NCBI GenBank assembly: GCA_965637545.1
Contig: OZ281498.1
Coordinates: 11,036,001 to 11,100,000 of the forward strand
Direction of reading: 5' to 3'
DNA: 64,000 nt
Origin: Phallusia mammillata
Taxonomy: Eukaryota
Below are positions 15,098 through 63,602 of the stretch, in pieces; position 1 is the stretch's first letter, and the number at the start of each line of letters is the position of its first letter. The position numbers were made by a program, and so were the translations under genes. The notes beneath the pieces are model-generated. The model was not told the origin of the DNA. It made no database searches and saw nothing but the letters and a program-made list of their open reading frames with translations.

Positions 15098-15226
15098 CTC
15101 ATCCAGTGACGGCGCATCATCGCAGAGTAAATGTCACGGATGTGGGTTTGTGGTCAACACCAGCTCGGAGCTGTACGTTTCGGTCAACTCCGTTCACTAC
15201 CACAAGGACTGCTTCAAATGTAGAAA
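15098..15226 (+). CDS. LIM domain exon 1 (CHGC-x19-HKDCFKCRK)
   Basis: Branch-like ctaac and pyrimidine tract ending ccctcAG; donor AA|gtaagt. Supplies the first five zinc ligands of a LIM domain. Confidence 0.9.
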
Positions 15227-18119
15227 GTAAGTCGATTTTGTAGTTATTCGACGTTTTTAACTCAACCAATTGACATACTTACTATCCTCGAGGAAGTCTT
15301 TTTTCTTAAAGTTTTATTTGCTTCTATGCTAGATCTAGCATAAAACTTTAAGAAAAAAGATTTACAAATGCTTGTTTGTGCGGAAAAATTTCAGTTGGTT
15401 AATGGATTTAGTGCAAAATAAGTAAATTTTTGATTCATATCTTAATGTAAGGTGTTGCGTGCTTTGTTTCTACACGTACATACTGCTATACTGAAAACGG
15501 AACCCTTGGTATTGCTTGAAACATCGAATACACATTTTTGTTCTTTCGTTAATGAACTTAACAAAATCAAGGTTTGTTTGGGATTTGAACCCGCGCCTGC
15601 TGAAGTATGTGAGGCAATTGGTCTGTAACTGAAACACACATTTCAGACATGCGATCAAACCTAGGTTCAGTGTTCCAGACAGTCTTGTATTTTAATCCAT
15701 ATTTCCGATACTGTTTGAAAACAAATTTCATGAATCTAAAGTCCAAACGTTTTATTCTTACCTCGAGTTAACGCCTTGGCTAAAATACTTGAGTCTATCA
15801 GTTTGCTTGTCCACAAGACGTCGCAATGGAGCACACTTCAGGTAAGTTCACTTGTAAGACCAAACAAAATCTCATCTGTACGCTCACTTCGAGTCTTTAG
15901 TTCGAACCCCATGAAAGACAATTCAAACACCAAAGACGAATGTATTTAAACTTTTTTAGTCTTCGTTCCTGTCTGTGTTGGATTGTTGCACATTTACGTA
16001 ACCTTTCTGTTTCCGTTTGGCCGATAACGATCTTTTTGATGTTACTATCCACGTGTTGTAGGTTGAAAATTTAGGAATGCTGAATCTTTCTTAAATCAAC
16101 TTGGGACACAATGTGTTCGGAAAAGTACTGCTATTTACATTTTGCACTGTTGCAACATCTGTTGTGTGTATTGTCAATAATAATTTATAATTCTGGGGCA
16201 TCTTACTGCAGAAGACATGTGCGTAATTACATGATTGTTGCATTGTCTGTCAGATTTATGCTAACGCCTTAGTTCAGATTTTGCTAAAATTTTGCCAAAG
16301 GTAAGTATGTCCTTCTGCGTGAATATGTAGAAGCAGACGTTCCGCTGAATAAGGTGCAGTGGCAAAGTGCGTGAAATGAAATGTAAGCCTCGGTCTTACT
16401 CGAGATTTTCTGCACCCTACACATTATGTCTATTTCGTTTTTCGTTTTTTTTTGGCCAAACACAACGTGTGTTTCAAACTGGGTATGTAGTTTGCAGTCT
16501 TACCTGCTTTGTCTTGTTAGATCATCACGTGTATTGTTTTGCAACGGGTCATTCGCGTATTTGTCTTCAGCAAACAGCACGGGACAGAAAAGTAAACAAT
16601 GTGCCGCTGCCGTTTGTAGCGAACGACTACTGCAAAACACATTTGCGGCGAAAGCTTAGAATTGTTCTGTATTGTAGTAAGTGGTAGCGTGGCATTTGTT
16701 ATGCTTATGATGCATACAGTCTTTGTTATGGTTAAGCTCGAAGTGGAAGGCTTTCCGATTCTTTATTTTTAATCTTTTGCACGTGATAAAAATCGCCTTT
16801 TGGGGGCAAATAACGCATTGACGTTGTAGTTGCTTGCATTATGTTGACTCAAAATGTCATATCTGTATCAGGTGTTTTTTGTTAAGTAAACTTTACAATT
16901 CGAATTTTCTGTTTTTTGACCCAAAGAATTTGATTTTGGGTTGACAAATTTGAAACGTTTACCAAATGTTCATTAAAAATGCCGCATTTTTGCGATTACT
17001 CGTATTTAAATGTTTTATTGTCCAACAGCTGCAACTATACTAGCGTAAACTGAAGATAGCTTTAAATTGAATTTACATCACTTCCAATTCATATACGTGT
17101 AAAGTGAGATGTCAAATGGATTCGGCTGAGAGAACAAATGCGTTTTGTCGGTTTAAATGCCGGCGCACTGAGCTAGTTTCTTAAAATATGACAGGAACCG
17201 TAGTGCTCAGGATATCGCATACTCTGTACAGTGGAAATGTACACAAAGATAGCTGCTGTTAAACTGATATTGGCTGTAGTTTGTACTGGTTTGTGTTTGT
17301 TAAGATGGAGTTTAGATGAAGTCACTTATAAAACGTTATGTAAACGCATTATAGGGCATTTTATAAAGTCAAAAATTAAACACAAGTTATAGAAACTTTA
17401 TGTAATTAAATGGCTTTGTAACCTTTGGATTTTGTATTGTCAGATTTTTAGATACTGTTCTCCATTAATAAGTAAAACGGCGTTTTTTCTTAACTTTGTA
17501 CAAATTGTATACAGATACGTTCTGCAGAGCGAAACAAAAACAAACATTGTGTTTCCGGCCTAAATTGTCAAAGTAGGCAACTTTTGTTTGAGATTTCTAT
17601 GTTGTTATGGTTGAAACAAAATTTTTTTTTCCGAAACATTGTATAACCAACGGGTGGTATTAAATACATTGGCAGAAAGTAAAGGCTTTAAAATCGGAAT
17701 TCTATTTTTACCCTATTTAATAAACCATGTCAACAGAAGTGTAAAGCGTAAACAGCCGAAATGAAGTAAAACAATTATAAGTTTGGCATTTTTTATTGGA
17801 ATTTTAATTCTTTTATTCTTAGAAAAACTGCCGATACCATTAGCTGATTAAGAACCATTTTTGGTAGAGTTTATACCACTGCGCATGGAATTGTTGTTTT
17901 ATGTTCGGAACTTGTCAGACTTCAATAAATAACATATGAGGTGCGCTTCGTTAAAACGTTATAGGACACTACGATTGTAGCGTTCCTTGCCACAACAGCA
18001 AACTAAAGTTAAGCAGATGCAAGTAAAAGCGACATTTCTAAGCTTATTGGTCGTGAACCAGTATCGTCTGGTGTCGTTATATGTTCAACATTTGTCACAG
18101 ACTTGCATGCTAAGACCGA

Positions 18120-18330
18120 CTGCCGCCTGCACGCGTGCATCATCACGTGACCTCCCCCACACCCGGTCCGCCGCCGGCTGGTCGATCACGTGATCGCGTT
18201 GCGTGGAAACCCAAACACACTGGAGGCGAATCTGATTTCCCGTGCGGCCACATTGCATGTTGAGGCACGTTCACATTGTCACGTAAGCACAACGTCACAA
18301 TGAAGCACATGGCCGTGCACGTGTGAAGTA
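18120..18330. promoter_or_regulatory. GC-rich intronic island with clustered E-boxes (TCACGTGA twice, CACGTG)
   Basis: TCACGTGA at 18143 and 18186; 12-bp palindromes TGCACGCGTGCA (18128) and GATCACGTGATC (18184); GC locally high against the flanks. Confidence 0.45.
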
Positions 18331-18529
18331 TGATGTTTATGTTTCACACTTTATTGGGGTGCTTGTTTTGCCGATTTATTGTGTTTCTTGGCGGCAAATA
18401 CGAACATTCCTGTGCAATCGGCGACGATTTGCGTACAATGACTCGAATATTTGTGTCATGTTCTTGAAAGAATACGCGTGTGTTTAACTTTTCCACTTTT
18501 TCTTAGTTTTGTTTGGTTTAAACTCTTGG

Positions 18530-18545
18530 TCGCTAGATGGCGCTG
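18530..18545 (+). promoter_or_regulatory. CTCF-like motif
   Basis: TCGCTAGATGGCGCTG resembles the CTCF core (CCASYAGRKGGCRS); motif match only. Confidence 0.35.
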
Positions 18546-21500
18546 CGAAGCTGGATTAGTAACTTTTTTACCCACTAAAGTTTGCGTTAAGACAAGCTTT
18601 GTATTTACGTAATGACAGTAATTTATAATTTCGGGCAAAGGCTTTTTTATTGAGTTATATGCCTGACAATCACTTAGCAAAGTGCGTCTTACTGGTCTTT
18701 ATATCTGAGCAATGGAAGGGATTTCTTCTATCGCCTTATTAAAAGAAATGTGGTCGAAGAATTGAATGATGTGTTTGACTTCAAATAGTGCTGGCGACTA
18801 CTGTAAATGTTAAAGGTCTCGTTGTCTTGTTTGCTCACTACATATGTAGGTGTATGTGCCATGTGCGTAACACTACTGAGATATGAAAAACAATACAGTT
18901 TTAGTGGTCAACCGTTTAATGTTTGAGTGAGGAATGTGTGAGTGATCAATTGGAACTTTGTTTTATCTTGGTGTTGCTAGAATATGGCTGATAGCTTTTT
19001 CCAGATTGCAGTCCTTAGATATGAAACAAGTTAGAACTCAGGCTCAGGCAACGAATGTACTTACAGTTGAGTTGAGATAACATTGCACCGGTTTAAAAAT
19101 ACCTAAAGAGACAATTCCATGAAGGTTTGTTAGTAAGAAAATGGGTCGAAATGATATTGATTGCGAGATAAATAAATAGAGTAGTTTGCAACTCCAATAT
19201 TTTGTGATAATGTGGAAACGACGTCTTGAAAGGATTCAGTGTTTCCCTTTCCATTCCACCTCCACTCCTCATCTATAGACAAAATGTTTTCCGTAAACAC
19301 TGGAAAATTAAGGGAGGCGGCATTTCCGTCAGTAAACAGACTAAGATGCGCAAAGCGGGTATAGAAGGTAAATTTTATGGAAATGAATTTTCCGTTCAGT
19401 TGGGCCATGTGATTCCCACAACGGATTTACTTTTGTCGTGATTGGATAGTCTTTGCTGACAAATGTATTGATGCCAACCTTTCGTAGAAATTAATCTGTA
19501 CTCTATATCTTAAACATAAATTGTTGATTAGCTTGAACTATAAATTGTAAAAATGATTTGCATATTGCGCTGTGTGTTTATCTAAGCTGCAACTTTTTTT
19601 CAATGGTTTATATTTAGCGGCATTTGTTCAAAGAGTATTTGCGAATCGTTAATCATTTCCTGTTTTGTTGTCAACGATTGTGCAGAGAAACTAAAATCAA
19701 TAAGGTTTTATTGAACCTTTTTGCCAAGCAAAAGCGTTTAGAGATTTTTGGAGCATTGATCATCAACCAACTGTCTGGTTTCAGGGCATATTGCTACTTT
19801 CATTTTCAGTGTTGAACGGCTGAAATGGTTGTGTGATTCTTGAAAGGCAATCAAGGGACGTGCATAAAGATACTGAAGTGGCAATATCTCTTTACAAGTA
19901 CCAGACTTATATAGACAACGTACCTCTTTGTAAACCTCAAATCGAAAACAACACTGGGTTCGAAATGAACACAAAATGGTTTAGCTTTCGGATATTTCGA
20001 CAGATTAACGCAGTCATGTCATAACATATTCTTACAACAATCTTATTAAAACGTGATATTAGGCATTTAATATTACCTAAACTTTGTCATAGCACGGTAT
20101 ACGAATGTAGCAATAGATTTGCACCAGCATTGCAACACGCTTATGCAATGCTGCAATACAAACGGAAGAGGAATTGACTAACGCAGAGCTTGTGTTGTTA
20201 CAAAACAATACATCTCTATGCGAGCTGCATCCTATTGCCAACTTTGTCCTTTGAATGACCCCGAAACTTAACCCCGCAAAACCGATCATATGTTTCACAT
20301 CCACTCGAGTTCTGTGCTTTCTACATGCGCCGAACCGTTGTGAACAGACTGGCTAGGAAATCGAACATCCTTTTCTATGCGAGGGCAACTAAATGGGCAA
20401 CAGTTCATGCAATGTGATGCTTTGCTTGGCGGAGGGGGTAATGTATAAAGTTCAAACCATCGATTACTGGAAATCTGCTAGGTTTATTAGAAAAAGCTCA
20501 AACATTTTGTGATTTCTGTTGCGATTTCATAGTGAAGAGTTTACCTCAGTAACATTATATTCGATAGTTATGCACATCTATTTAACATATGAAATTTGCA
20601 ATTGCGTATTTAGTTCCCAGTTTTTCCCGCTTTAGTTCCCTCCTTTAGCGTTTTGCCACTCTTACCAAATTTACCAATTTAAGCTAAAATCCAGCAATAT
20701 TTGTTTGTTGGAACGTTTGTTGTGCTTTATTGCGTATTTTTTTATTTATGTCCATTACATTACTGTGACAAACAGTAATAAATTTAAATAACATATGACA
20801 AAACCTTCATTTATTTCGATTCAATGGCGCTACTGAAGAAGTTTAAAAAAGTTAAAACGTTAAAAACTGTCCACTGTGACAAATGGTTCCACTTCTCTAT
20901 TTCCACATCGTTTCGAACATTTACGTCAATCGGTGTGACTCATTGCATGTGGTTGCAATTGTTGGCTGAAGTCAGCTTGTTGCTAAAACAAATCCCTTTT
21001 TAGCATGTAATGATAAGAATTTGGGGTAGAACGTGCCGACGGATGCCGTTGACCATCTCGTGGTTTGTTCAAATTCATTTTCTTACTCATTTTGGATTCT
21101 ACTTGTGGGATGTTTTCGATTTTCAGTCTATGTTTGAATGGCTAATAACATTGTTATTAGGGAAATAAGCTATTCCTGCGAGGCATAATGTACAAATAGA
21201 TATTGCTCTTCTAGCAATATTTATTATATTATATATTATTATTAAATAGCAATACAATGAAATCCCAAAGTGCCTAATCCGAGTAATGCCACTCTTATGG
21301 ACATGACCTCGCAATTGGACAGATAATGATTCGTTATGACGTAGTGGTTTGGGGGACTCTAATTGGTTAAATGTTTTGCGACTGTGAATTGATAGGAAAC
21401 CTGGCAGGAAAGCGACTAAAGTCAATGGACTTTTCGAGTTTCGCGTCTACATCCCGGCTAGTTTACCGAAAACGTTTACCAGAGAGTTTGTTAGATGCTT

Positions 21501-24089
21501 ACGTGTTTTCAAATAAATTGTGTGATATTGAATCAGTCAACTTTGAGTCGGAAGCGCATAGAGTAATAAAGAGGTGCTTTATGATCTGATTTTCTGGGTG
21601 TTCTTTGCAGCGCGATTATGCGGAAAAACAATTTTACAGGATACGAATTCTTTGCCTGACTTGTAATTATGTTTTCTTTGTCTGAGTAAATGTAAGTTCT
21701 AATGTTGATAGTATATTTCAAAAAATATTTTTCGAGCAAAAAATGGCACTTTAAATCTCAATGATACGAGTGCTGTTGGATTTTGGCAAAAACAATTCAT
21801 TACGTTATTCCTCTAACATGGTGGTCGTCCATTAGTCACTTTTATTTCAAACCTAATCCTGACTCCCTTGTGTAAAGAGTTGTTGATTGACGTGTAAAGC
21901 TTCATCAGGAGTTTTTTGTTAAAAGTTGTTGAATGATTCCGGCTTCAGTCCCCTTGGCAACAGAATGAATTAATATTGATTATCACACGATAATAAGTAT
22001 AATGGAGAAGACGTTAGTACTGGTAGTCGTACAGACATGAGTTTTATTTCTTGTGGGCGAGCAAGCGAAAATTGAAAGCTAACTATTGAAGTAAATATAA
22101 AAAGTGGTAAACATTTATACTTATCAGTGCATCAGTATTAAAACGTCTCAAAAACATAATTTTGTTCTTTGTTGTTGGATAAGGTTGATAATATATCTAC
22201 ATTGGAATCATTGTACGTTTGTGGGAATACATTTATCATGTGTGTATATTTCAATAATTTTTTTGGAAATGATAAAACAACTAAGTATCAGGTAGACCCT
22301 GTAATCTTATATACCTGGGTTAATGGTTTGATTTCTTTACCTACCAATTTACCACTCACAATAGTAACCTAATACTTTGATTGTTATCATAGCAGATAGG
22401 TTGTGAAATAGTATGACTCTTCATGGAAAGGCTGTAGCTAGTGTAAAATTGTCTTAGTAATCCGAACCTGGGAATAACATGGTTAATAGTTTTAGACAAG
22501 CAATAGTTTTTTGGTTGTAATACAGTTTTAGAGGCTTTTAAAGGTACATTTGGGCCAAATATTACATACTTTACCAGATATGTTATACATGAACTTTGTC
22601 AAAGTATATTATAGAACAAAGATAAACCCCATTTTATTGAACGAAAGTGTCAAGAGTTTGTGTTAACCTGTCATCAACAAGTACGATGTTTTTCCACGGT
22701 ACCTTGTTACCTTATTAAACTTTGTTGCGTCACAAACACATTTCTATCTGTCTGTCGCAAATAGGATGTGGCAACCGCTAACATGACGTTTGTGATGTCT
22801 CACCGGAAATAAGCACGTGATCTCAGGGGTTAATATTTCGCGCTGAACGTTTGGCGCCAAAATTCACTGAAGCTAAAAGTAAACTGGGTCGGCGGGGTCA
22901 GCGCCTATGTAATTTCTAAAGTTGCTCTGTTATAGAGCTCCTACGTAGAAGCGTTTGCACGATAGAAGTTATGTAAAATGTGTCATACTTCTAGGAACTG
23001 CTTGCAACCCGTCCATAGAAGTCACATGTTTTAATAGAAATCATATGACGGACCTTTAGATGTGATTAGTTGTTTCAGCGAAAATTTTGATAGCTTGTTA
23101 ATTAAGTGACTTTATTTCGCAAGTTACTGGGTCTAAAGGTTGGTTGGTGGTGTAACATGGGTGATGTTATGACTCGTCTGTATAAACAGGGCACAAAAAT
23201 AATTTCAACATTTCACGGAAAACAGACGGAATCTAAATTTCTCTTCGCAATAATTTTAGAAAGTCGACCCGTTTCGTTTCAAACTTTTTTAAACTCTCGA
23301 AAACATTTGTATGGACCTAAATCCAGGGATTTAACAAAACTTGCGAAAATATTTGTGAAATGGTATTGATTGCTGTTATCGATTTAACACCCTGCTATGC
23401 ATGCTGGAAAAACAAGTGATTACTCTTTATACTCTAGACCTGCACTCTGAAAAAGAGATTATGAGATGTTTTTTTATACATTTGTTGTTAATTTTGTTCA
23501 ACTGAAAGTGACAATAGCGAATGTAGGATCATCCGATGACCCCTGCTATAACTGACTTGTGTTTTTTCTGCTTAGAAAACATACACTGTTTCTGAAACAA
23601 TACTATTCTCTTACGCCACATATGGATAAAACCACAAGTATAACGCGGCTATAACTACCAACAAGAAGGTGTAATTAAGATTTATCCCGTATTTGATGCT
23701 TTTCATTTTCAAGTTGTTTTCAATTTACCTGTACACACCTGTAGAAAACTTAATTAGCTGTAAGCAACTCAACAACACACGTAGGTTGAAAGCTTGAGCG
23801 CTGCGTCAAACTTGTGTGGGTAGCCCAGCTATAAAACGGGCCACTTGTAAACAATTAAACCGTTCCAAAACTTCACAGGCAAGATAATTATCGCCCTGTG
23901 ATGTCATAATTACATATTATGACGCGACAATCAACGATCTTCGAATGCACATGATACGAAATTAACTTCGGTGCTTTTCGTGTTAGGTATGCGAGAACTT
24001 GAAAAAAAAACGTTTTAGGCTGTATATCAAGAATGTAGATTTTATGTTTTGCTTTGCGTTGGCATAGTCGGTCGTTGGATGCTTTAGAA

Positions 24090-24313
24090 CAGAGGTCGGC
24101 AACCTTTTTTGCACTGCGGAACGTTTTTGAAACTGAAATTTTATCTCGGACTGGCCTTGAAAAAAAAAAACTACGAATATATAGCAATAAAGACGCTTAA
24201 ATTAGATTATCTTCCCCGGAATGCACGGGGAAAACGTTTCAAAGCATTTAACCTGAAAATTATACGGCCCGGCGGTAACGAACTTTTTGCGGATTGGCGG
24301 TTGCCAACCACTG
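24090..24313. mobile_element. hAT (Charlie-like) MITE, 224 bp
   Basis: Imperfect TIR CAGAGGTCGGCAACC / GGTTGCCAACCACTG; 8-bp TSD CTTTAGAA / CTTTAGGA (1 mismatch). Confidence 0.8.
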
Positions 24314-33927: not shown

Positions 33928-34901
33928 ATGAACCGGTCAACAGCATCTCTTCCATCAGCGTCTATCCTCAAGAGCAGTTCCATGTTCTTTGAGGCGGGCA
34001 AGGAGCAAGATGCTCTCTCCACCGATTCTGGTTTCTCTTCTGAACAAATCTTCACCACGTGCTACGAGAACCCATGGACGCCCCGATTTCCCCCCACACG
34101 CCGGAACCGCTTAAACTTGAACAATCGACCTCTGACCCCGTTGAAGGTCAAATCCGTCGGCGCGTTTGGAGTCGAGAAAACCAAAGCCTTTCCGATTTTC
34201 TCTGATATTCCGAACGATGACGCGCATATGAACGGGCGCTCCCCCCATTTGGCGGTGACGAGAAGTCATTCGAATGATTGTGACGTCAGAACGTCGCGAG
34301 TTGCACCGACCCCCGTCCGCCCGATGTCGCTAGTGGTCAACCCAGTCGTGTTAGAACCAATGGAAGATTCCAGTCGGCTAATCACGTCAACTACAAAAAC
34401 ACGGGATTCCTCCACCGTCGTGCGGAAAACAAAACCCGATAGCGATGACGTCAGCAGCATGACGTCATCCCCTTTGGAGTCTGGATCTTCGGATTATCCG
34501 GATCAAAATTCTGAATCGGAACATCAGGAGACGCCTGTGAAGGTGGTGATGAGGCAGAAGCGCGGTTTACCGGAGGAAGCGGAGGTTAAGAAGAGTCGAA
34601 GGCGTTCTCTACCAAATGTCTTCGGCTTAAAAAGGAACTCTTTGTCCGGTTTAAGTATTTTCAAGAACGTTTTCCACATCTCCCGTTCATCAAGCATTGA
34701 TAAAGAGGAGCAAGTCGCGTCCTCCGAGAGGAGGCAGTCTCTTCCCGAGCATCAAATCGTGGAAGAGCTCTTCCGCAAACCGGGATCACGGAAAACGAGA
34801 AAAGTATCATCTGCATCTTCTGCATCTTCCACATCAAGTTCGTCTTCTTTCGGAAGCAAATTTCGATCCACTGAAAGACGGAAGGTTTTTGGCAAGAAAA
34901 G
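33928..34901 (+). CDS. Alternative first coding exon B (324 aa, Ser/Arg-rich, predicted disordered)
   Basis: Long GC-richer ORF with first ATG at 33928; donor AG|gtattt at 34902 in phase 2, in frame with exon 45586; upstream acceptor ttttgcAG at 33839. Confidence 0.75.
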
Positions 34902-36255
34902 GTATTTTTTATGCTCTTGTTTTTGTGACTCAACGTGATTGTGTGAGTTAATTTAGTGGGATGTTACTTCAGGTGTAGAGTTAATAGGATTTGCTATTTA
35001 GGAGACATTTTTAAGGGACTGTTGGTGTTTATTGAAGTCGCTTGATGTATCTTTTAGATTTGTAACGAAGCTTGAAGAGAGATTTGCTTTGATTTTTTCG
35101 TCCCAATTAAGTCATGTACGTAACTTAAAGATTTGTGTGTGTCTTCCGCTGTTAGCCTAATATGTAGAGAAGCTTATTGGCTTTTAGATAAACTAATTCA
35201 TATTTCTTAGCTATTTGACATTTTTTGACAACAATTTTCGTTTTTGTGATACAAATGTATCAGATGTAAATTAGGCATATTCTCCTAAACCTAAAGTCAC
35301 AATACGAGAATTACACACTTGTGCATCAAAAACAAAACCCACAGTTGCTAATAAGCAATAATCCGCAACTTTTAACTTTTTCCCGCCTAATACGTTGTCG
35401 TACAAATAACGCGCAAATATGTTTTCCCTAAACGTCACCTAATCGGATTAGCGCACCGCAAAATATCCGTCAGTAGGTTGAAATCGGTACGACCAGGTTA
35501 CTCATACTATAGACTGCGGCCACCTAATTCAATTTGTTCACTTGGCTGTTGTATCAGCACAACCTCAAGTTGACTGCAAACAACAGTTTTTTCTCCTTAA
35601 TCGCATTTCGTAAACAGATTAATACTTTGCCTTTCCCACATCAAAGAAATTGAAGTTTTTGAAGATTCTTTTTTCATAAGCACCAAAATCGAATTTACAA
35701 ATTTACGGTTTGCTGTATTAGACTTGGAATTTTTTGTTTGGTTAAAACCAACAGCGTTTGTAAAGTGCGGTTGGACACTGAGCTGCTGTTACTTTGTATG
35801 GCTAGCGCCACTTAGTGGTATAGAATTAACTATTTTTGTACACGATGAGGCGCTAAATGCACAAAATGTTTTTAGCGGGTTTGGGCTTTTCAAACTTAAT
35901 TCGTTTTGTCACTCAAATCGAGTTTGAATCAGAAACGCCAATCGATCACATTACTGATATATATATATCTGTTTTGTTTGGTTTTTGACTTTTGTTATTG
36001 TTTCCAAAACGTAATTGTGCCAAGAAAGTTCTTGTGACCATTCTGATAAAATATTCGGTTTACATTTTTATTCGGTTGTCAATGTGAGATCAGCATGTAG
36101 TAATGCTTGTGTTAAAAAGCTATTCCAAACCTCAAAGAACTTTTTCAGACAAAAGTCACACTCTATAATCACGTCAACCAGATGCCTTATTACGCAATAG
36201 GAAGCGCATTGTTATGTCACCACCAGCTGTCAGACGCTGACTTCGCTCAGTTGTG

Positions 36256-45585: not shown

Positions 45586-45618
45586 GTGTGATGCTCCACT
45601 AACACTGAAAACGGCTCG
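45586..45618 (+). CDS. LIM domain microexon (33 nt), CDAPLTLKTA
   Basis: Long T-rich acceptor ending tttAG, donor CG|gtaagt, phase 2-2; supplies the sixth LIM ligand with the correct C-x2-C spacing. Confidence 0.85.
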
Positions 45619-48587: not shown

Positions 48588-48633
48588 AGAAGCGTTAAAC
48601 TTGTAAACTTCAATTCTCGAACGAAAGAAACCC

Positions 48634-51900: not shown

Positions 51901-52566
51901 TTCAAGTTCGGGATTGGTAGCAGTTGGACAAAGGGCAATCAGTAAACTTTGTCACTAATTGGTGGCTCATTTTTATTTACGTATTATTCAGACAGAACAG
52001 TAATATTTAATATTTTTTTTCTAAATTTTAAGTTTTACATTACAAAAAAGTTTCAAAACTTGTTAAGAGACAATGTACTAGCAAAAGGCAAGTAAAATGA
52101 ACGATTTGTTTAGTTTTCTGTCGTAGGGCCGTGAATAATGGTTTAGCACCGCAATGAGTTAAGGCGTTTAGCATTTAATCCAGCTTTTTTAAAGATTTAT
52201 ACAGAAATTACTCCCATCTATGTAAAAACACATTGGACAATAAGCAGCCATTTGCGTATGCGCACGCAGCACAATAAATCGAACACCCTCTGCGTGCATT
52301 TCGAAACTGTTGACCATATAACGCGTTTGCATGTTTACAAAATCAATTCTAAGTCCGATCTTGGCATTAATGAGTCAGTGAATAGATTCAACGACACCTC
52401 ATGATTCACCCATGTCGCAAATTTAAAGCAGAATAATATGTCAATGACGCATGAGTTGTTCTTTATTCGTTGCTGGTGCGCTTTAAAGGCAGTTTGCAGG
52501 TTTAATATTGTTGTTGTTTGTTCGGCTATGGGAGTTAATCCTTTTGAAAATAAACTTTATTGCGAT

Positions 52567-52710
52567 GGTATTCCCCAGGGTTCCATCCTAACCCCATTTA
52601 ATGCCTTGCTTGTGCGTAAGCAGAAAACTTTATAGAAGCTGTTGTTATTTTAACAGCTGCATTATCAGTGTGGAGTTTTAGGAAACGGCGCGCCAGTTTT
52701 ATTATATGCA
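52567..52710 (+). mobile_element. Possible decayed non-LTR retrotransposon RT fragment
   Basis: One frame reads GIPQGSILTP...(two stops)...GVLGNGAPVLLYA, resembling LINE RT motifs G(V/I)PQGSxLxP and LLYADD at plausible spacing; the catalytic DD is absent. Confidence 0.35.
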
Positions 52711-53547
52711 CTGAACCGTATTTAACCGTGAGGTTTTGCAGAATGTTTTTGTACGCTTTTTAGTCTGGATTTAATTGAATTTTTACAACTTAGCTACACA
52801 TAATTGAAAATACAACATTTATCAAAAATCGTCCCCTTTTTAGTGCGCATTTTGGCAAGTCCGTTTTCGTAAATAGCTTTTAACATGGTCACGTGCAAAT
52901 ATTGAAAGTATTAAAATATGCATGACATGTGTGGCACTGAGTAGTTCAAGTAACAGATAGAATACATCACCAGCAGATGGTGTTTGACGATTGCTGAAAG
53001 CACTTGAGAGAACGTGTAGCGCTGAACAACGCTGGTGGATGTGTGTATTGATTTTACCGCGTAAATTATGCCAAGTTACCTCGATTTTAGACAATCAGTT
53101 CCCTACCTACCTAACCGATGTCCGTTATTCACCTGATGTCACCACACAGCAGAACGTCCCGTTTTTTCTCGGTCTATTCATCACACTCGTTTAGCGAAAA
53201 AGGCCAGCCACAGCTCTGTTGATGTTACACCATTTAGTTGGTGTCGTTTAAGTTGAAGCAGTGCAACAACTATTGGCTGTGATGCAATTTAGTGCTGGCT
53301 GTTCAGGAGTTGGCTATTTTACACTGGTTGTTCGCTCAAGAAGGAATTTGGAAACACTTGCATTACGGAAACATTTTATTTTAACCACATCTTATGTGAA
53401 ATTTTATGACGAAATATTGCAACTATTGTATCACAAACCCTCTCTTTCTTTGTTTACAAGTTTTTATCCTCAGTGAACTTGAGCAGTTAGGTTTCAGAAA
53501 ACAAATTTTGCAATCAATTCGAACCACAACAAAAGCTTGCAGGCATT

Positions 53548-53642
53548 ATGATGTCATACCGCGATCCTTCGTACCTCGCAGCCTCTCTCTCATCCGACGA
53601 AGATGACGATGACGTCATCTACCTTCCGGCGCTGACAGCAAG
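53548..53642 (+). CDS. Alternative first coding exon E, MMSYRDPSYLAASLSSDEDDDDVIYLPALTA
   Basis: ATG at 53548, perfect donor AG|gtaagt at 53643, phase 2, open frame. Confidence 0.7.
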
Positions 53643-56600: not shown

Positions 56601-58030
56601 CAGACTGGTAACAGCTTTGGCGCTAATCAATAGTAGGAAACAACCGTGTTTGTCAATAGTAGATTCTTCCAATGTATTTTCTCTGCTAAATTTAGCAATT
56701 ACAGTCCCAAACAACAAAACAGCACCTAATTATATTTGACAATTCCCTTTGTTACGTCATAATTCGCCTATAGACTCATTGAGAATTCGCAACAATGGTT
56801 GTAACAATTCAATACCGGACGGGGGGCCTGTACTCAAGCACGTGCTTTATATTCCAGCTTAATCCGATACTGCAAATGTTTCGGCGCGACGTGTTGGTTT
56901 AGCTCGCTTGTGTATTTTGTAATCTGACCCCCAACTTATGTTATATGTAGGCTTTAACAAATTTAATCATGCTTACAGTACCTACGCCTCATAATCGTGG
57001 TCAAAACTTTCTTGTGTTTTCTTTTTGCGATTGAACATTTTTGGGTAAAAAAATACTGATGAATGGTTTTGTAGTCAATACCCACAAAAAAGGACGAAAT
57101 ATAAACCACAAGTAAACATCACCTATTGGCGTCTTTTGTAAAGTTAAGTTGGTTTGGAAAGTCAAACAAAAGTTAACGTACTTTGTCTGGTAACCTTTCC
57201 CGCTGTCACACTTGGTACGTCACTACGTTGGCTTTGTGACGTCACATTGAAAAAATATTTGTCTTGGACAACAACTTGAATGGTATAAGGGCTTTATTCA
57301 AAATTACTGTGCAAAATGCTTGATAGATTATTAAAACGCTTTTGCTTTTATGTTGATCAATAACATCGCGGAACATGCAACCGTTTCCGCATAATAAACA
57401 GTATGACGTCACAAACGCTAAATTGTGCCGCAATTGGTTATCGACCGATGAAATGTCGGTTTATTGCATGTCGCCGCATTCGTGCCAGCAAATTAATTCC
57501 AAAGTCATAATCTGAACAACAATCAGCTTCAGCTTATCGACCGGGAAAAGCAAAAGCTTAAAGCTAAAACATTCTAGGTTTACCCGGCCTGGAATTGTTT
57601 TTTGTTGTTATTAAATTCCCGTTGGTCGGTATGACTAAGGACACCTGGTGCGTTATAATCCGTCCATTCGTTATGACATCACAATAGATCCATTGTGATT
57701 CGATACACAAAGTGGAATGCGTTTTTTCTGTTAAGATGTTTTTGGAAAAAAGAATAGTCGTTTAAGTAAAGTTTGGTGAAAAACGTTTTTTACCGGCCCA
57801 GCATTCGTGTCAAATAAATTGGTCGAAGCATTTGTACTATATTCTGTGATACATAAAGTGTTCGCTGTGCGTTTTGCTTAATGATGTTGAAAATGCAGGT
57901 TTTTGAGTAACACATGAGTTATGTTTAGGAAAAAGTGTGAATGGTTTGGTGTATGAGTGCATAAAGGGTGTGTGTCAGAAGCTGTTTCGCCCTGTCACAT
58001 AAAACAACCCAACCATTGATGGTTGTTCAG

Positions 58031-58498
58031 TGCCGGAGCAGAAGACCAGGAAGATATCCCTTTTCCATTCTCTCCGACCATTCATTGGCCGATTCCAAGC
58101 GCAAAATCACGAAAGCTTGTGTCTCGGGCGAGCACAGAAAGCCTTGGAAATTTTTCTGCCCCTTCTGGTGAGAGCGAAGCAGCTTTCCACTTCCATCAGA
58201 GTCATGGAGTTCGCAGGATTCGAAGTCTAGGACCCGGAGATAAAACGCAAGTGGGTCGTCTCCGTCAAAGACGCGCGGCGGTCTCAGCAGCGACCTCTAT
58301 CGACCAGCCTGGTGTGAATGAATCGACTCTTGAAGAGGGAATAGCGATAGATCAGTTTGGAATGCCGATGAAGAAGAACACGATGCGGATAACCGCTCGA
58401 TTCATAGGTTCCCTGCAGAAGCATTCGGCGCAAAAGTCAAAGGCTGAGAGGGTGGCAAAGGCTGCTGCACTTGCTACTTACCTGAGCAACCCTAGAAG
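58031..58498 (+). CDS. Alternative coding exon F (468 nt, phase 2-2)
   Basis: 159-codon ORF preceded by an in-frame stop at 58017. Acceptor ttgttcAG ends at 58030; donor AG|gtagcg at 58499; in frame with exon 58850. First in-frame ATG only at 58362. Confidence 0.6.
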
Positions 58499-58849
58499 GT
58501 AGCGACCAAAAATGAGGTTTTGTTAACCACAAGTTGGCGCCCGTGCGCATTGGAAAGGTTATAGGTCTTATAGATAGCAAAATCACTTGTCTGAAAAGTC
58601 ATACTACCTTTCACAAATGTCTAGGTGTTGAATGACAACACATTGTTGAAAAAAAAACAGTCTTGTAAAACCATTTAAAATTGTCTGAGGGTTATTTCAC
58701 ACTACACACTCATACAAAATAATTTATACTTTGGAACACAATGTGTGTTCACTTCGATCCTTCAACGGGTTTTGCATTAAACTTGTCAGTTACGTTTGAT
58801 TGTGGTTTACGTATTTCTGAACTAATATCTCAAACATTTACTTCTACAG

Positions 58850-58910
58850 CAAAGAGTCGGATGGCGGTGTTTTATGCGACCCTTGTTCTGATGACGCCTC
58901 CAATGACAAG
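58850..58910 (+). CDS. LIM domain exon 3, KESDGGVLCDPCSDDASNDK
   Basis: Acceptor cttctacAG, donor AG|gtaagt, phase 2-0; supplies the final C-x2-C. Confidence 0.88.
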
Positions 58911-59471
58911 GTAAGTTATATCTGGCAAAATTTTGTTATTGTAGCTATGTTTTTGTTGCTGAATAGAGTGTGTGCTTGCTACTGTCTTGCTGTAACATCT
59001 GGATACAGTCGGGAAAAAAAAACAGTGATAAAAACCATTGTGTATGAAAAGCCCAACAACTTTCATAAAATCTTTTGTTGTTCTGTTTGTATTTTCGACT
59101 GTAGACAGTACAACAAACAGTATTTTAGTTTAGCTGTTTAACTGTAGTGGCCTTGTCATGCGAGTGTAGTCAACCTTAGTGTGTTTGTGTGTGCGTGTGT
59201 TGGATTGTCGAGTGCCACACATGATTTCTATGTTTCAATCCACACGCCGATTCGTGTAATCGTCGACCTTAGCGGAACCCGCTGACACATATAATTTGTT
59301 GCATGCGCCGATTCGATATGAGTTATCACAACCACATGTTACTTTTGCCATCAACCAACACCCAACCCTCTCTCACTCGTCGCCACAGCGTATTATGACG
59401 TCAAGAGTCGATTTGTCCTCCATGTGTTTGTTTTTTGTGCTTGTATTTCTACTTGTTGTGTCTTGTTGTAG

Positions 59472-59507
59472 GCCGATGACCTTATCGCCATGCTCGAAAA
59501 AATGCAG
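59472..59507 (+). CDS. RAP1GAP: GoLoco motif exon 1, ADDLIAMLEKMQ
   Basis: Acceptor tcttgttgtAG, donor AG|gtaaga; matches human Rap1GAP DLFEMIEKMQ. Confidence 0.92.
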
Positions 59508-59531
59508 GTAAGAATTTCTAGCAAACGCGTG

Positions 59532-59582
59532 TGACCTCGGGTGACCCCGATGACGCGCATACAGTATGACCTCGGGTGACCC
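59532..59582 (-). promoter_or_regulatory. Two identical DR4-type nuclear receptor elements
   Basis: TGACCT-cggg-TGACCC at 59532-59547 and 59567-59582 (GGGTCA-n4-AGGTCA on the minus strand). Confidence 0.45.
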
Positions 59583-61365
59583 CTGGGTGGTAGAGTCTTC
59601 CACGTCTGGTGGTCGACACTAAAAAATAGAATGTATAAAAAAGATAACATGGATTTTGTCATGTTCACAACTTAAACGCCAAGAACGCGTTAACGTGCAT
59701 GTGTAAAGCCTAAAAGATTTCTTAAACCCAAAAGTTTCGCATGAATTTCCTGAGTAAATGAGCATGTATTCCTAAATCGATTCTGCGCTGTCAAAATTCA
59801 CTAAAGGCATTGATCTAAACACTTGAGCAACAGCATAGGTTTAAAAAATAGTGTTATAATCTTAATGATCGCTAGGAAATCAATATTATCAATCTATCTA
59901 GTCTCATCAATGTGGCAAGCAGTCGATTTAAGTAGCACAAAAAACGCACTCTCCGCAGTTTTGTTTTTACATGAAGATGCTGTTAAACAACTTGAACAAA
60001 AAAAAGCACAGGTAAAACTGAAGAAAAGGTAAAAATGTGATTTGTACAGTGACAAAAATAAGCCTACAGGTTTTGAGTGAAATCAGTGCATTTAGTCTTG
60101 AATTTTTGTGAGAAGTATACGTTGATAAACATAAACCGCATCTGTCCCTTGAAAAGAATAATTGTTCTTGCCATTAACCTCTGGAATATAGAAACATCTT
60201 TCAAGGAATAGAATCAGTTGAAACGTGCAGAAGTTGTATTTGAATTAGATAACATTGTCAGTTCCTTATTCAAATAGAATCAAGTAAGCTTTGTCTGATA
60301 CACAGTTAAGGTTAGAAATACTGTTACAATTTTCTGTGCCTTCTTTGATCTGGCCTTGCAGAAATTTTCCATTCAACATATCACTTACGATTAATAGCAA
60401 TCTTAAAATGGATGGAGAAATAATTTTACGTTCCTTTCAATGCCTCTCGTTAACGCACACTGAGGTATTCAGGGGAGAAATATACATTTTTTCTGGTAAT
60501 TAAACAACCACCGGCCATAATCAATAAATTCAAGCACTCACAACACATCACATCAGCCTCTTGGGTCCGTTTCTCGCAAAACGCCCACATTTCGGCCTTT
60601 GTTGATCTATTTTTAACTGGTTATGTGTTTGTGGAGCTCCCCGCCGCACAGCTGGTCCATGTTTTTCTAAGTGTGGGCAACTGTACGGTTTCTTACCTCA
60701 AATCCAATTGCTAAGCAATGTATGTGAAGCAATCTGAAGATTACAAAGCAGTTAGTAGCAAAGCGTTATAGTTCAGCACAGTATTGGTGTTGCTACACAG
60801 TCTGCTTGCGGTTTGTCGAATCAATTTCTTTAGGGACGCAAATGGTTTACGAGATATACGCTTCGGGTTTATCGCTGTATCAGTTCTTGTCAGGCTTTTC
60901 ACATCGAACGAGCGGTTGATTTTGATTCAGTGCAGGTTTTTTGCTACGCTGTGAATGTCTTTCGACTTTAGTGCAAAGGAGTAGTGTTCTACAATATTGT
61001 ATAATGTTGTACGATTCTAAGCTATAGACAAACCTGTTGTTTAGAATTTGACAGCAAGAGAGCCACCTAAAGGAGTAACTATTTCAGGGACTAGTAAAGG
61101 CGTCAGATTAAAAAGGTGCGATTTTGATCGATGTAGAGCATTTTCTTAGGTACAGTTGTTTTTTATTGTTAGTCGGTTAAATCACAACCAGATAGAAGAC
61201 AAACAGTGGCAGTGTTTGTTTTTATTCCAATCTTAACAGTTGCTGACTATGACGTAACAATCAACACAACGGATGTTTCATCTTGGTCATCGCGTAGTGG
61301 GCAGCTCTTGACCGCTAACTTCCTCTCTATGCGGAAGCAACCCCTTTGTTATCGCACCTCGCGTT

Positions 61366-61392
61366 ATGACGTCACAGTTCAACTCCCGCGAC
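61366..61392 (+). CDS. Candidate short alternative first exon G, MTSQFNSRD
   Basis: ATG overlapping TGACGTCA, donor AC|gtgagc in phase 0, in frame with exon 62658; lies in a GC-richer promoter-like patch. Confidence 0.35.
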
Positions 61393-62581
61393 GTGAGCAA
61401 ACGAGGAAAGACGAGGCCAACAAACAAATGAGGAATGTGTGAATTTTCGACGGGAGTTCAGAGACGTTAGTTATTTGGTGGAGTCAAAATTTGCCCCTTT
61501 CTTTTCTCACGTTAACTTTTCACGTTTGTCGATTCTCCTGGAACTAGAAGTTCACCTTTCGTGATGGTTTGCGCTGTTAGATCACGCGTTACAGGTTCCA
61601 AACAGGGAGTGAAGCTACTGCGCCTGTAGTACAGCACTTTGCCATTAAGTATGCTCATAAGGGGGAAATTATTATACGTATTCTATTGATGTTTACTTGA
61701 AAGATATTGTACTGTTATAGAACTGTTTTAACAGACACCTAGTCAGAAATGACTGTAAGACATTATACAGCTGTAGTTATACTGGATTGCCAGATAGCAT
61801 TTTATAGTGACGGTGAAAATTGACACAGTCAGTAGGTACAAATGGTGACCATACAAGCTTGAGATTTTGTCAACAGTTGTGTTGTTATATTTGTGTTTGT
61901 AATAGGCAGCAGTAATTGTAGGAAAGTAGGGACATTTTCGGAAACATGAAATGCGGAGAGTGCGCAAATATTCAAGAAGTTTTCGTTCCGCAGTCAAATA
62001 CCCAAATACGGTGAGATACTTCAAATAACAGAACATAATTTAAAATGGAGACCGAGAAATAAGGGTAAATAAAGGAATACTCCTTTTAAGATAGCACAAG
62101 TTGTCAAACTTGAAAACGTTACCGAATTTCCCACTCCAAAATACCTATTTATCAATGGCCTCAACGTAATATGGTAGTAGCTTGGTTGGCCTAAAGTTGC
62201 AATACCTTGGAAATGTCAAATTATTGATTTTGTTGAATGGTCGTTAGATTTGACGTAGCTTTGATTTCCTTCCCCATAAATCGAGCTCATGAAACAGCAA
62301 TTCAAACAAGTTTGTGGAATAGTCAGTTTTACTTCTGTGGCAGAGTATATCAACTTTACGAACACCATAAACCATTACGTTTTCTTCCGTTTATTTAGGC
62401 TAACCCACTCAGTACCGTTTTTCAAATATAAGACGACATTTGTCGAAACCAGGGAAAGAGCCATTATATTAAAACTTCACAAAACAACTTTGAAGATCAA
62501 TACAGTTTAGAAATCGGTTTCAAACGTTTTCGTAAAGATACATTTTTATAATTGTCATACGTCATCACATTGACGTGTCCA

Positions 62582-62595
62582 ATCTCCATGGAAAC
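62582..62595. promoter_or_regulatory. RFX X-box-like element
   Basis: ATCTCCATGGAAAC fits RTHNYYWTRRNRAC; next to TGACGTCA (62600) and a YY1-like AACATGGCG. Confidence 0.4.
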
Positions 62596-62657
62596 GTGTT
62601 GACGTCAACATGGCGCCGTGCGGTTGTTGATAGTTTGTGTTTTCGTGTTTTTCAAAG

Positions 62658-62720
62658 GCGACACGCATGGATGAGCAGCGCTGTTCTCTTCGACTTCCTG
62701 TCCCCACCAACGACAACCAG
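62658..62720 (+). CDS. RAP1GAP: GoLoco motif exon 2, ATRMDEQRCSLRLPVPTNDNQ
   Basis: Acceptor ttttcaAAG, donor AG|gtctgt, phase 0-0; RMDEQRCS is identical to human Rap1GAP. Confidence 0.92.
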
Positions 62721-62756
62721 GTCTGTCTTTACCCCGGTTTACCCCCATTTACGGGC

Positions 62757-62767
62757 GGGAAATTCCC
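62757..62767. promoter_or_regulatory. NF-kappaB-type site
   Basis: GGGAAATTCCC, 37 bp into the intron after exon 62658; motif match only. Confidence 0.25.
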
Positions 62768-63368
62768 TAAGCGACCCCTAACCCAGTCGCATATTTTTAT
62801 TATCTAACGTCATTAGGTTATGACGTCACATTGACGTCAGATTCTATTCTATGGCTCGGTTCGAATTTCGATTTAATATCCTCTTTTTCTTTTCATGAAA
62901 TTTGCCTTTTTACTAACTCGAAATAATGAATTTGAGTTTTAAAAAAACAAATTAATCAAATTGATCGAAATTGACCACAGTAACAATCGACAGTTGTTGT
63001 TTCAATTCACTCTGAAACAACGAGATAATAATTTGTTTTGTTTATTTTTGCTGCATGAAGTTTTCTAGCTGAGCGTAGTTGTGTGTGTTTGTTTTTTGTG
63101 TAGTTGTTGCTGCGTGTGATTTCCACGCTTTTTATACGAAAATCACTGTGCTGCTGTCGTTGTGTGATTGTACGATGTCGCTTGTTGCGATATTAACTTA
63201 AAATTTACTAAATTTTAAGTTCGTTTTAAAGCAATGTATAAAAGCGAGTTCCTTATGAAACCAGTCGAAATATCATAAACAGTGTTTGAGTTTAAAAATT
63301 CCGCACAATTTTATTTTGCGAAACACTACTATTAGAACAGCCCCATAACCCCTAAATTACCCCTACAG

Positions 63369-63602
63369 CCTGACGCTCCAACCCCACTGTATCCATCAAT
63401 CAACGAGGTGCTGCGCAACGGAGCCCCCTACGCCCAGGTTATTCCCCCTCCGCATGGGGGATACTGGGCTCAGGGATTTCACCCCGACTCTCCCCACCTC
63501 CGTGTCGACCCCGATGAGCTCCAGTGCGTCGTCGGCTCCTACGTCAGCCATATCCACAAAGATGACGTCACTACGGCTTATCGCGAGCATTTTGTTGGAA
63601 AG
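63369..63602 (+). CDS. RAP1GAP: Rap1GAP exon, start of the conserved dimerization/catalytic region
   Basis: Acceptor ccctacAG, donor AG|gtaaat; PDAPTPLYPSINEVLRNGAPYAQVIPPPHGGYWAQG...AYREHFVGK aligns with Rap1GAP YPSVHEVL...GGYWIEG...IYRKHFLGK. Confidence 0.95.

What the first reader, a model, noticed from the sequence alone, without database searches (positions are those of the whole stretch)
15098..63602. LIM-GoLoco-RapGAP domain architecture
Three exons give a LIM domain with exact spacing: C-x2-C-x19-H-x2-C-x2-C-x2-C-x18-C-x2-C. It sits about ten residues before a canonical GoLoco motif (DDLIAMLEKMQATRMDEQR) and the Rap1GAP region. Human Rap1GAP and Rap1GAP2 have no LIM domain. A LIM domain could tether a G-alpha-i/o-binding Rap inactivator to adhesions or actin.
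Basis: partly seen in the sequence, partly recalled or inferred. Interest (0 to 1): 0.72.

Follow-up and report, generated by a model that had tools for sequence, protein, structure and literature searches.

The report
LIM-bearing Rap1GAP isoform, sea squirt
This is the front half of the sea-squirt (Phallusia mammillata) Rap1GAP gene, and some of its transcripts really do add a zinc-binding LIM domain before the G-protein-binding GoLoco motif; the arrangement is old and shared with molluscs and annelids, and it already sits in databases, although I found no paper on it.

Summary
Confirmed, but not new to the databases. The window holds the 5' half of the Phallusia mammillata Rap1GAP gene.

- **LIM domain.** Exons 15098-15226, 45586-45618 (a 33-nt micro-exon) and 58850-58910 (the exon ends at 58910) encode one complete LIM domain. 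It scores 35.6 bits in Pfam and has all eight zinc ligands.
- **GoLoco and beyond.** Eight residues later comes a GoLoco motif (33.5 bits) split over 59472-59507 and 62658-62720, then the Rap1GAP N-terminal region (63369-63602). The catalytic Rap-GAP domain lies beyond the window.
- **Splicing.** Transcript-like contigs from three studies show micro-exon->58850->59472->62658->63369. The 15226->45586 joint rests on deposited proteins only. The deposited P. mammillata protein CAB3265433.1 (1257 aa) has LIM, GoLoco, Rap-GAP_dimer and Rap_GAP. It equals the spliced translation except for one residue.
- **Relatives.** The same architecture occurs in Ciona, Styela, Clavelina, Owenia (annelid), Haliotis, Babylonia and cephalopods. 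In Owenia the LIM is cut at the same two codon positions and phases, with the same 33-nt micro-exon. The fusion therefore predates the protostome-deuterostome split.
- **Isoforms.** Internal first exons bypass the LIM, and the GoLoco exons can be skipped.
- **Function.** A docking role for the LIM is inferred, not tested.

Two earlier notes of this scan (s1-388471, s1-388458) concern the same window, not other DNA.

The parts
523..606 (+). Shared upstream coding exon of the long isoform A. The first ~350 residues of P0169 lie 5' of the window.
   Evidence: P0169 residues ~351-378 map here; AG acceptor, GTAACC donor.
5311..6020 (+). Alternative first coding exon C (starts MAGRR...). It splices in phase to exon 6480-6562 and so leads into the LIM isoform.
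   Evidence: Open frame from an ATG with a GTCAGT donor. 36% identical over 248 aa to the N-terminus of Ciona isoform X3, which carries LIM+GoLoco+Rap_GAP. No Pfam hit.
6480..6562 (+). Shared coding exon (SDILRRLSPDRRKSPK...).
   Evidence: Exact match to P0169 residues 378-406.
7099..7237 (+). Shared coding exon.
   Evidence: Exact match to P0169 residues 407-452.
7610..7732 (+). Shared coding exon that precedes the LIM exon.
   Evidence: Exact match to P0169 residues 453-493; its phase fits 15098.
15098..15226 (+). LIM exon 1: first zinc finger (C, C, H, C) plus the first Cys of the second finger.
   Evidence: Contiguous with E2 in P0169 and in Ciona, Styela and Clavelina proteins.
33928..34901 (+). 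Alternative first coding exon B. It splices to the micro-exon and bypasses LIM exon 1.
   Evidence: Deposited P. mammillata protein P0020 (CAB3265435.1), residues 1-325, maps at 100% identity. The homologous exon sits at the same place in Ciona (L002 19637-20686).
45586..45618 (+). LIM micro-exon, 33 nt (CDAPLTLKTA plus split codons); carries the sixth zinc ligand.
   Evidence: Its sequence is the loose end joined to 58850 in 4 runs. The same 33-nt exon with the same phases is in Owenia and Ciona.
58020..58498 (+). Alternative exon D, joined to 58850. Its 5' limit is not determined; the open frame starts at 58020.
   Evidence: Joint 58498->58850 with GT..AG in runs X9 and X1; the frame is open into E3.
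58850..58910 (+). LIM exon 3: the last two zinc ligands (C-x2-C) and an 8-residue linker.
   Evidence: Joint 58910->59472 in all 4 runs.
59472..59507 (+). GoLoco exon, first half (ADDLIAMLEKMQ).
61907..62010 (+). Alternative exon E, joined to 62658. It gives a product with only the second half of the GoLoco and no LIM.
   Evidence: Joint 62010->62658 in run X9; a frame with Met is open into E5.
62658..62720 (+). GoLoco exon, second half (ATRMDEQRC...), with the D/E-Q-R arginine.
   Evidence: Joints on both sides in all 4 runs.
63369..63602 (+). Rap1GAP N-terminal conserved region (...PPPHGGYW...YREHFVGK). The next exon (EHVNLYAYDE...) is beyond the window.
   Evidence: The loose end behind 63603 continues into Rap1GAP sequence. 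Matches P0169 residues 600-682.

Best explanation
Shown. The window holds the 5' half of the single Rap1GAP-type gene of the ascidian Phallusia mammillata. Transcripts that start at the distal first exons (A, upstream of the window, or C, 5311-6020) run through three small exons that together encode one complete LIM domain. They then run through two exons that encode a full GoLoco motif, and on into the Rap1GAP dimerisation and catalytic domains. Transcripts that start at internal first exons lying inside the LIM-splitting introns or downstream (B 33928-34901, D ...58498, E ...62010) lack a complete LIM. Exon E also removes half of the GoLoco, and the two GoLoco exons can be skipped in frame. 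The layout, including a 33-nt micro-exon inside the LIM, is shared with Ciona and with the annelid Owenia, so the LIM-Rap1GAP fusion is ancestral to protostomes and deuterostomes. Inferred. The catalytic domain inactivates Rap1/2 through the conserved Asn thumb. The full GoLoco binds GDP-bound G-alpha-i/o, as in mammalian Rap1GAP1b. The LIM is an isoform-specific zinc-dependent docking module that adds a second, partner-dependent address for where Rap is switched off. Promoter choice decides whether that address is present.
For: - **Exons, phases and splice sites:**
- **Domain scores:** Pfam LIM and GoLoco are above their curated cut-offs.
- **Fold:** the AlphaFold model has pLDDT 84-90 over the LIM, and all 50 listed Foldseek PDB hits are LIM domains or LIM-containing proteins.
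- **RNA:** joints E3->E4->E5->E6 and the E2 loose end at 58850 appear in 4 runs from 3 studies. The alternative joints 58498->58850, 62010->62658 and 58910->63369 are also seen.
- **Deposited proteins of the same species:** P0169 has LIM 505-560, GoLoco 569-590, Rap-GAP_dimer 669-775 and Rap_GAP 796-975. It equals the spliced translation but for one residue. P0020 maps 100% to 33928-34902 and then to E2 and E3.
- **Orthologues with the same domains:** Ciona X3, Styela X2, Owenia, Haliotis, Octopus and a cephalopod contig carry all three domains by Pfam. Clavelina X3 carries LIM, half a GoLoco and Rap_GAP; Babylonia carries LIM and Rap_GAP with a sub-threshold GoLoco.
- **Conservation:** seven zinc ligands, the eighth as C or H, and the GoLoco R-D-QR residues are invariant in 9 sequences.
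- **Introns:** identical positions and phases and the 33-nt micro-exon in Owenia. The same exon order, including the internal first exon B, in Ciona.
- **LIM orthology:** with the ascidian LIM as query, the lophotrochozoan Rap1GAP LIMs outrank all but one of the other LIMs retrieved. The exception, Batillaria P0147, is probably a truncated model of the same gene.
- **Catalytic core:** matches human Rap1GAP 1SRQ at E 1e-111 with RKRHIGND conserved.
- **GoLoco isoform logic in mammals:** PMC12329598.
Against: - No binding partner, localisation or zinc binding was tested, so the LIM function is inference from what LIM domains generally do.
- The E1->E2 joint was not seen directly in reads. The single read-laying run covered 58400-64000, and the contigs' upstream parts were not shown. 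This joint rests on the deposited P0169 and on orthologues.
- The runs are only guessed to be RNA. The exon-only coverage and GT..AG joints argue that they are.
- A single LIM is not enough for the tension-sensing actin binding known for multi-LIM proteins (established knowledge).
- The catalytic domain is outside the window.
Confidence: 0.85

Rival explanations
1. The LIM is an intramolecular regulator rather than an address. It folds back on the adjacent GoLoco or on the GAP or dimerisation domain and gates G-alpha binding or GAP activity. Promoter choice then yields regulated and constitutive forms.
For: The LIM sits only 8 residues from the GoLoco, and this close spacing (8-33 residues) is kept across phyla. 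The least derived copy (Owenia) is nearest in sequence to the MICAL1 LIM; MICAL1's full-length autoinhibited structure appears among the fold matches.
Against: The model of the 146-residue LIM-GoLoco segment gives low confidence outside the LIM core and has a pTM of only 0.38. No interdomain model was made. The linker length between LIM and GoLoco varies from 8 to about 33 residues.
Confidence: 0.2
2. The LIM exons are an evolutionary leftover carried by some transcripts, with no function of their own.
For: Most first exons mapped in the window (B, D and E of A-E) bypass the LIM. From established knowledge, human RAP1GAP and RAP1GAP2 do without it.
Against: All zinc ligands and several non-ligand residues are invariant between tunicates, annelid and molluscs. 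The micro-exon and its phases are preserved. This is the signature of purifying selection over more than 500 million years.
Confidence: 0.04
3. The LIM exons belong to another gene or are a chance pattern, and the join to Rap1GAP is a reading or annotation artefact.
For: The introns are very long (30 kb and 13 kb), and E1->E2 was not seen directly in reads here.
Against: The E2->E3->E4 joints are seen in 4 runs. The deposited same-species protein matches. The same join is annotated in at least eight other genera. Pfam and fold results confirm the domain.
Confidence: 0.01

Closest known systems
Mammalian Rap1GAP1b / Rap1GAPII (full GoLoco + Rap-GAP)
   Same: The N-terminal GoLoco motif carries the D/E-Q-R arginine. 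The conserved ...GGYW... region, the dimerisation domain and the catalytic domain with RKRHIGND are present (E 1e-111 to 1SRQ). Alternative 5' exons give full or truncated GoLoco forms, as described for Rap1GAP1a and 1b (PMC12329598).
   Different: A complete LIM domain lies 8 residues upstream of the GoLoco, and there are long isoform-specific N-terminal extensions. Human RAP1GAP and RAP1GAP2 have no LIM; this rests on established knowledge and was not re-tested here.
Automatically annotated invertebrate Rap1GAPs: Ciona LOC100183188, Styela LOC120327908, Clavelina LOC143449350, Owenia CAH1774913/4, Haliotis 'rap1 GTPase-activating protein 1-like', Octopus LOC106883520, Babylonia LOC143287560
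   Same: They share the LIM-GoLoco-Rap-GAP_dimer-Rap_GAP order. In Owenia and Ciona the LIM intron positions and the 33-nt micro-exon are also the same.
   Different: The last zinc ligand is His in lophotrochozoans and Cys in ascidians. The cephalopod form has two GoLoco motifs. The GoLoco is one exon in Owenia but two in ascidians.
Capsaspora PXN-like protein with four LIM domains and a Rap-GAP domain (Koch et al. 2012, PMC3305314)
   Same: LIM and Rap-GAP domains sit in one polypeptide.
   Different: It has four paxillin-type LIMs and no GoLoco is reported. It is a different lineage and presumably an independent fusion. It was not compared by sequence here.
Single-LIM cytoskeletal proteins (EPLIN/LIMA1, MICAL1) and FHL/CRP LIMs
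   Same: These are the best solved-structure matches to the Rap1GAP LIM. Owenia matches MICAL1 at 36.9 bits and EPLIN at 33.5. Phallusia matches FHL at 33.2, LMO4 at 29.1 and CRP at 25.6. The fold matches have rmsd of about 2 A.
   Different: There is no consistent subclass assignment, and the flanking actin-binding or CH domains are absent. Similarity is at the level of the generic LIM fold.

Membership tests
LIM domain (Pfam PF00412) | Eight zinc ligands with spacing C-x2-C-x16-23-H-x2-C-x2-C-x2-C-x16-21-C-x2-(C/H/D) | tested here: met
   C-x2-C-x19-H-x2-C-x2-C-x2-C-x18-C-x2-C in the spliced translation. The ligands are invariant in 9 orthologues, with the last as C or H.
LIM domain (Pfam PF00412) | Profile score above the curated cut-off | tested here: met
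   35.6 bits against a cut-off of 22.9; 29.5 bits in full-length P0169.
LIM domain (Pfam PF00412) | Double zinc-finger LIM fold | tested here: met
   The model has pLDDT 84-90 over residues 11-50. All 50 listed Foldseek PDB hits are LIM domains or LIM-containing proteins, with rmsd 1.7-3 A over 54-68 columns for the better-fitting hits.
LIM domain (Pfam PF00412) | Binds two zinc ions | not testable with these tools
   Needs metal analysis of the purified domain.
GoLoco / GPR motif (Pfam PF02188) | Profile score above the cut-off over the whole 22-residue motif | tested here: met
   33.5 bits against a cut-off of 25.1, profile positions 1-22.
GoLoco / GPR motif (Pfam PF02188) | Conserved D/E-Q-R triad whose Arg contacts GDP | tested here: met
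   ...RMDEQR... in E5; R, D, Q and R are invariant in 9 orthologues. The role of the Arg is taken from PMC12329598.
GoLoco / GPR motif (Pfam PF02188) | Binds GDP-bound G-alpha-i/o and slows GDP release | not testable with these tools
   Needs a binding or GDI assay.
Rap1GAP family | Rap_GAP catalytic domain (PF02145) preceded by Rap-GAP_dimer (PF21022) | tested here: met
   In the deposited same-gene protein P0169: 212.2 and 96.5 bits. These domains lie outside the window. Inside the window only E6 and the read-through EHVNLYAYDE at 63603 link to them.
Rap1GAP family | Catalytic Asn ('Asn thumb', human N290) in the RKRHIGND helix | tested here: met
   RKRHIGND aligns identically to 1SRQ. Chain index 216 plus the construct offset of 74 gives 290. 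The identity of N290 as the catalytic residue is established knowledge (Daumke et al. 2004), not tested here.
Rap1GAP family | GAP activity on Rap1/Rap2 | not testable with these tools
   Needs a GTPase assay.

The most novel reading that the evidence does not exclude
The ancestral bilaterian Rap1GAP was a LIM-GoLoco-RapGAP protein. Its LIM is split by introns that house internal promoters. This forms an ancient, conserved switch that turns a LIM-dependent address on or off (and, separately, G-alpha-GDP versus G-alpha-GTP recognition). Vertebrates lost the LIM arm of that switch. The LIM would then define an uncharacterised partner or compartment for G-alpha-i/o-controlled Rap inactivation in most marine invertebrates.
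Probability: 0.35. Interest if true: 0.5.

Novelty: new variant of a known kind. Interest (0 to 1): 0.33.

Why it matters
Rap1GAP is the textbook link from G-alpha-i/o to Rap and so to adhesion and ERK dynamics. All mechanistic work uses mammalian forms, which lack a LIM. This report shows three things. A LIM-bearing form is conserved from tunicates to annelids and molluscs. Its 33-nt micro-exon is preserved. Promoter choice inside the LIM-splitting introns decides whether the domain is made. Together these give a concrete handle for experiments: compare LIM-plus and LIM-minus isoforms in Ciona or Phallusia embryos, where mRNA injection and electroporation are routine. The evolutionary point is modest (an ancestral domain lost in vertebrates). 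It is not a new kind of system, and the sequences are already public under uninformative automatic names.

Tried and rejected
1. **Separate gene or chance pattern.** I considered that the LIM exons belong to another gene or arose by chance. This is rejected by the RNA joints, the deposited same-species protein and the orthologues.
2. **Direct read evidence for E1->E2.** This was not obtainable. Contigs X10 and X13 run about 1.8 kb upstream of E3, which fits either isoform A or isoform B.
3. **Exact look-ups.** P0169, P0054 and P0159 were not on record in the look-up of encoding contigs. The Haliotis, Babylonia and Octopus genes were too long to fetch. Intron conservation was therefore tested only in Owenia and Ciona.
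4. **Taxonomic distribution.** The word-indexed searches gave few candidates (73, 472 and 161), and only the top 150 representatives were listed. Presence or absence in amphioxus, echinoderms, hemichordates, arthropods and cnidarians was not settled. Absence from the lists means nothing.
5. **LIM subclass.** The assignment was inconclusive and differed between the Phallusia and Owenia copies.
6. **Pfam misses.** E6 alone, exon C (5311-6021) and exon B gave no family. The 'LINE ORF1p-like' reading of 5311-6020 in note s1-388458 thus gets no Pfam support, though Pfam is not an exhaustive test.
7. **Literature.** Four full-text searches found no paper on a LIM-containing Rap1GAP. The only LIM plus Rap-GAP combination mentioned is the Capsaspora protein.
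Full report
**What is in the sequence.**
Reading the claimed places and splicing them by script gives six + strand exons.

| Exon | Coordinates | Length |
|---|---|---|
| E1 | 15098-15226 | 129 nt |
| E2 | 45586-45618 | 33 nt |
| E3 | 58850-58910 | 61 nt |
| E4 | 59472-59507 | 36 nt |
| E5 | 62658-62720 | 63 nt |
| E6 | 63369-63602 | 234 nt |

- Each exon follows an AG. Each is followed by GTAAGT, GTAAGA or GTAAAT, except E5, which is followed by GTCTGT.
- The phases fit throughout and give a 185-residue open translation.
- E3 ends at 58910; the GT donor begins at 58911.
- Eight residues after the last Cys the GoLoco motif starts. It is split after ...LEKMQ between E4 and E5.
- Pfam scores the spliced piece at 35.6 bits for LIM (cut-off 22.9) and 33.5 bits for GoLoco (cut-off 25.1).
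- An AlphaFold model built on nine orthologues has pLDDT 84-90 over the LIM core. All 50 listed Foldseek hits in the PDB are LIM domains or LIM-containing proteins.
- E6 alone has no Pfam family. It is the conserved Rap1GAP stretch upstream of the dimerisation domain. The catalytic domain is not in the window.

**Is it spliced that way?**
Four runs were laid on 58400-64000. They come from three studies and are kept as contigs. Exon-only coverage in three of them (X1 also covers introns) and GT..AG joints in all four mark them as transcript-like.
- All four show 58910->59472, 59507->62658 and 62720->63369.
- In all four, the letters lying before 58850 are the E2 sequence, so E2->E3 is also shown.
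- Behind 63603 the contigs continue with letters that read EHVNLYAYDE.
- E1->E2 could not be seen this way. It is supplied by a deposited protein of the same species, P0169 (CAB3265433.1 / UniRef A0A6F9DR11, 'Rap1 GTPase-activating protein 1', Phallusia mammillata, 1257 aa).
- P0169 contains the whole E1-E6 translation with one Ser/Thr difference.
- P0169 has LIM 505-560, GoLoco 569-590, Rap-GAP_dimer 669-775 and Rap_GAP 796-975.
- Its catalytic part matches human Rap1GAP (PDB 1SRQ) at E 1e-111, with RKRHIGND identical, including the position of the catalytic Asn 290. The role of that Asn is established knowledge.

**Organism.**
A second deposited P. mammillata protein, P0020 (CAB3265435.1), maps at 100% identity over 325 residues to 33928-34902. 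The window is therefore P. mammillata.

**Gene layout and isoforms.**
- P0169 maps to further upstream exons at 523-606, 6480-6562, 7099-7237 and 7610-7732, which lead in phase into E1. Its first ~350 residues lie 5' of the window (first exon set A).
- An alternative first exon C (5311-6020) has the same phase. It is 36% identical to the N-terminus of Ciona isoform X3, which carries LIM+GoLoco+Rap_GAP.
- Exon B (33928-34901) lies inside the 30-kb intron between E1 and E2 and joins E2 (P0020). The product keeps only three of the eight ligands.
- The contigs add a joint 58498->58850 (exon D). Its product keeps only the final C-x2-C.
- They add a joint 62010->62658 (exon E). Its product has no LIM and only the second half of the GoLoco.
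- They add a joint 58910->63369, which skips E4+E5 (99 nt, in frame, no GoLoco).
- LIM and GoLoco are thus independent optional modules, set by promoter choice and cassette skipping.
- This parallels mammalian Rap1GAP1a and 1b. There the full GoLoco form binds G-alpha-o-GDP and the truncated form binds G-alpha-o-GTP (PMC12329598).

**Relatives.**
- A search of 1.84 billion representative proteins with the LIM-GoLoco piece was followed by three word-indexed searches.
- These found the architecture in Ciona intestinalis (X3; X2 has LIM but no GoLoco) and Styela clava (X1-X6 cluster).
- In Clavelina lepadiformis, isoform X3 has LIM plus half a GoLoco.
- They also found it in the annelid Owenia fusiformis and in Haliotis (four species, a 44-member cluster).
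- Babylonia areolata (LIM and Rap_GAP, with a GoLoco below the Pfam cut-off), Octopus bimaculoides and a cephalopod cluster named RAP1GAP in Sepia also carry it.
- In a nine-sequence alignment the first seven ligands are invariant. The eighth is C in ascidians and H in lophotrochozoans. The GoLoco R, D, Q and R are invariant.
- With the ascidian LIM alone as query, the lophotrochozoan Rap1GAP LIMs outrank all but one of the other LIMs retrieved. The exception, Batillaria P0147, is probably a truncated model of the same gene.
- In the Owenia gene (L001) the LIM is interrupted at the same two codon positions and phases, with a 33-nt micro-exon just as in Phallusia.
- In Ciona (L002) the whole order is the same: A exons, C exon, shared exons, LIM exon 1, B exon, micro-exon, LIM exon 3, two GoLoco exons, E6.
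- The fusion therefore arose once, before protostomes and deuterostomes split. From established knowledge, human RAP1GAP and RAP1GAP2 lack it, which implies loss.

**Function.**
- Shown: the domains, their conservation and the isoform logic.
- Inferred: the catalytic domain switches off Rap, the full GoLoco binds GDP-bound G-alpha-i/o, and the LIM is a protein-docking module present only in distal-promoter isoforms.
The LIM is single. Its nearest solved relatives differ between the Phallusia copy (FHL, LMO4, CRP) and the Owenia copy (MICAL1, EPLIN).
- A rival is an intramolecular regulatory role next to the GoLoco.

**Novelty.**
- Four full-text searches found no paper on a LIM-containing Rap1GAP.
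- The LIM-family survey of Koch et al. 2012 mentions only a Capsaspora protein with four paxillin-type LIMs and a Rap-GAP domain.
- The architecture is nonetheless already in public databases for this very protein and for at least eight other genera, with Pfam domains precomputed.
- I rate it an uncharacterised variant of a known kind, of modest interest.

Noticed in passing
window 5311-6020: Alternative first coding exon (237 aa, coiled-coil-like start). It is conserved as the N-terminus of Ciona isoform X3 (36% over 248 aa). It has no Pfam family at E<=0.01, so the 'LINE ORF1p' reading of note s1-388458 gets no profile support here.
   Followed up: partly
window 33928-34901: Large internal first exon (325 aa, Ser-rich, no Pfam hit) inside the LIM-splitting intron. 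It is conserved at the same place in Ciona (L002 19637-20686). Its products keep a three-ligand LIM remnant.
   Followed up: yes
window 58911-59138: The deposited protein P0020 (CAB3265435.1) reads through the E3 donor into the intron (…NDK then VSYIWQNF…). It is an intron-retained or unspliced transcript model, not a true C-terminus.
   Followed up: partly
window 58890-58905: The window reads DDASNDK, whereas the deposited proteins read DDATNDK (P0169) and DDSTNDK (P0020). These are allelic differences in the LIM-GoLoco linker.
   Followed up: no
window 58910->63369 (joint): In-frame skipping of both GoLoco exons in run X1. Ciona has matching products (H2XLV4, isoforms X2 and X5) with LIM or a LIM remnant but no GoLoco.
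   Followed up: partly
window 880-2250: Repeated peptide-like frames (…IRIQFELLS…KIEYMTTF…) in several frames suggest a tandem or interspersed repeat in the intron after exon 523-606.
   Followed up: no
L001 60057-60893 (Owenia): A separately called 279-aa gene with no Pfam hit lies inside the intron between the LIM micro-exon and LIM exon 3. It may be a transposon ORF or an internal first exon like those of ascidians.
   Followed up: no
P0160 (cephalopod transcript contig): The cephalopod Rap1GAP has a LIM followed by two GoLoco-like motifs (…LIEMLERMQCDRIDDQRC… and …FLETLMQCQGRRLDEQRC…) before the RapGAP domains.
   Followed up: no
window 58400-64000, run X1: Run X1 covers most of the introns at low depth besides the spliced joints. 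It looks like total or nascent RNA, or carries DNA, and differs from the window at five intronic sites.
   Followed up: no
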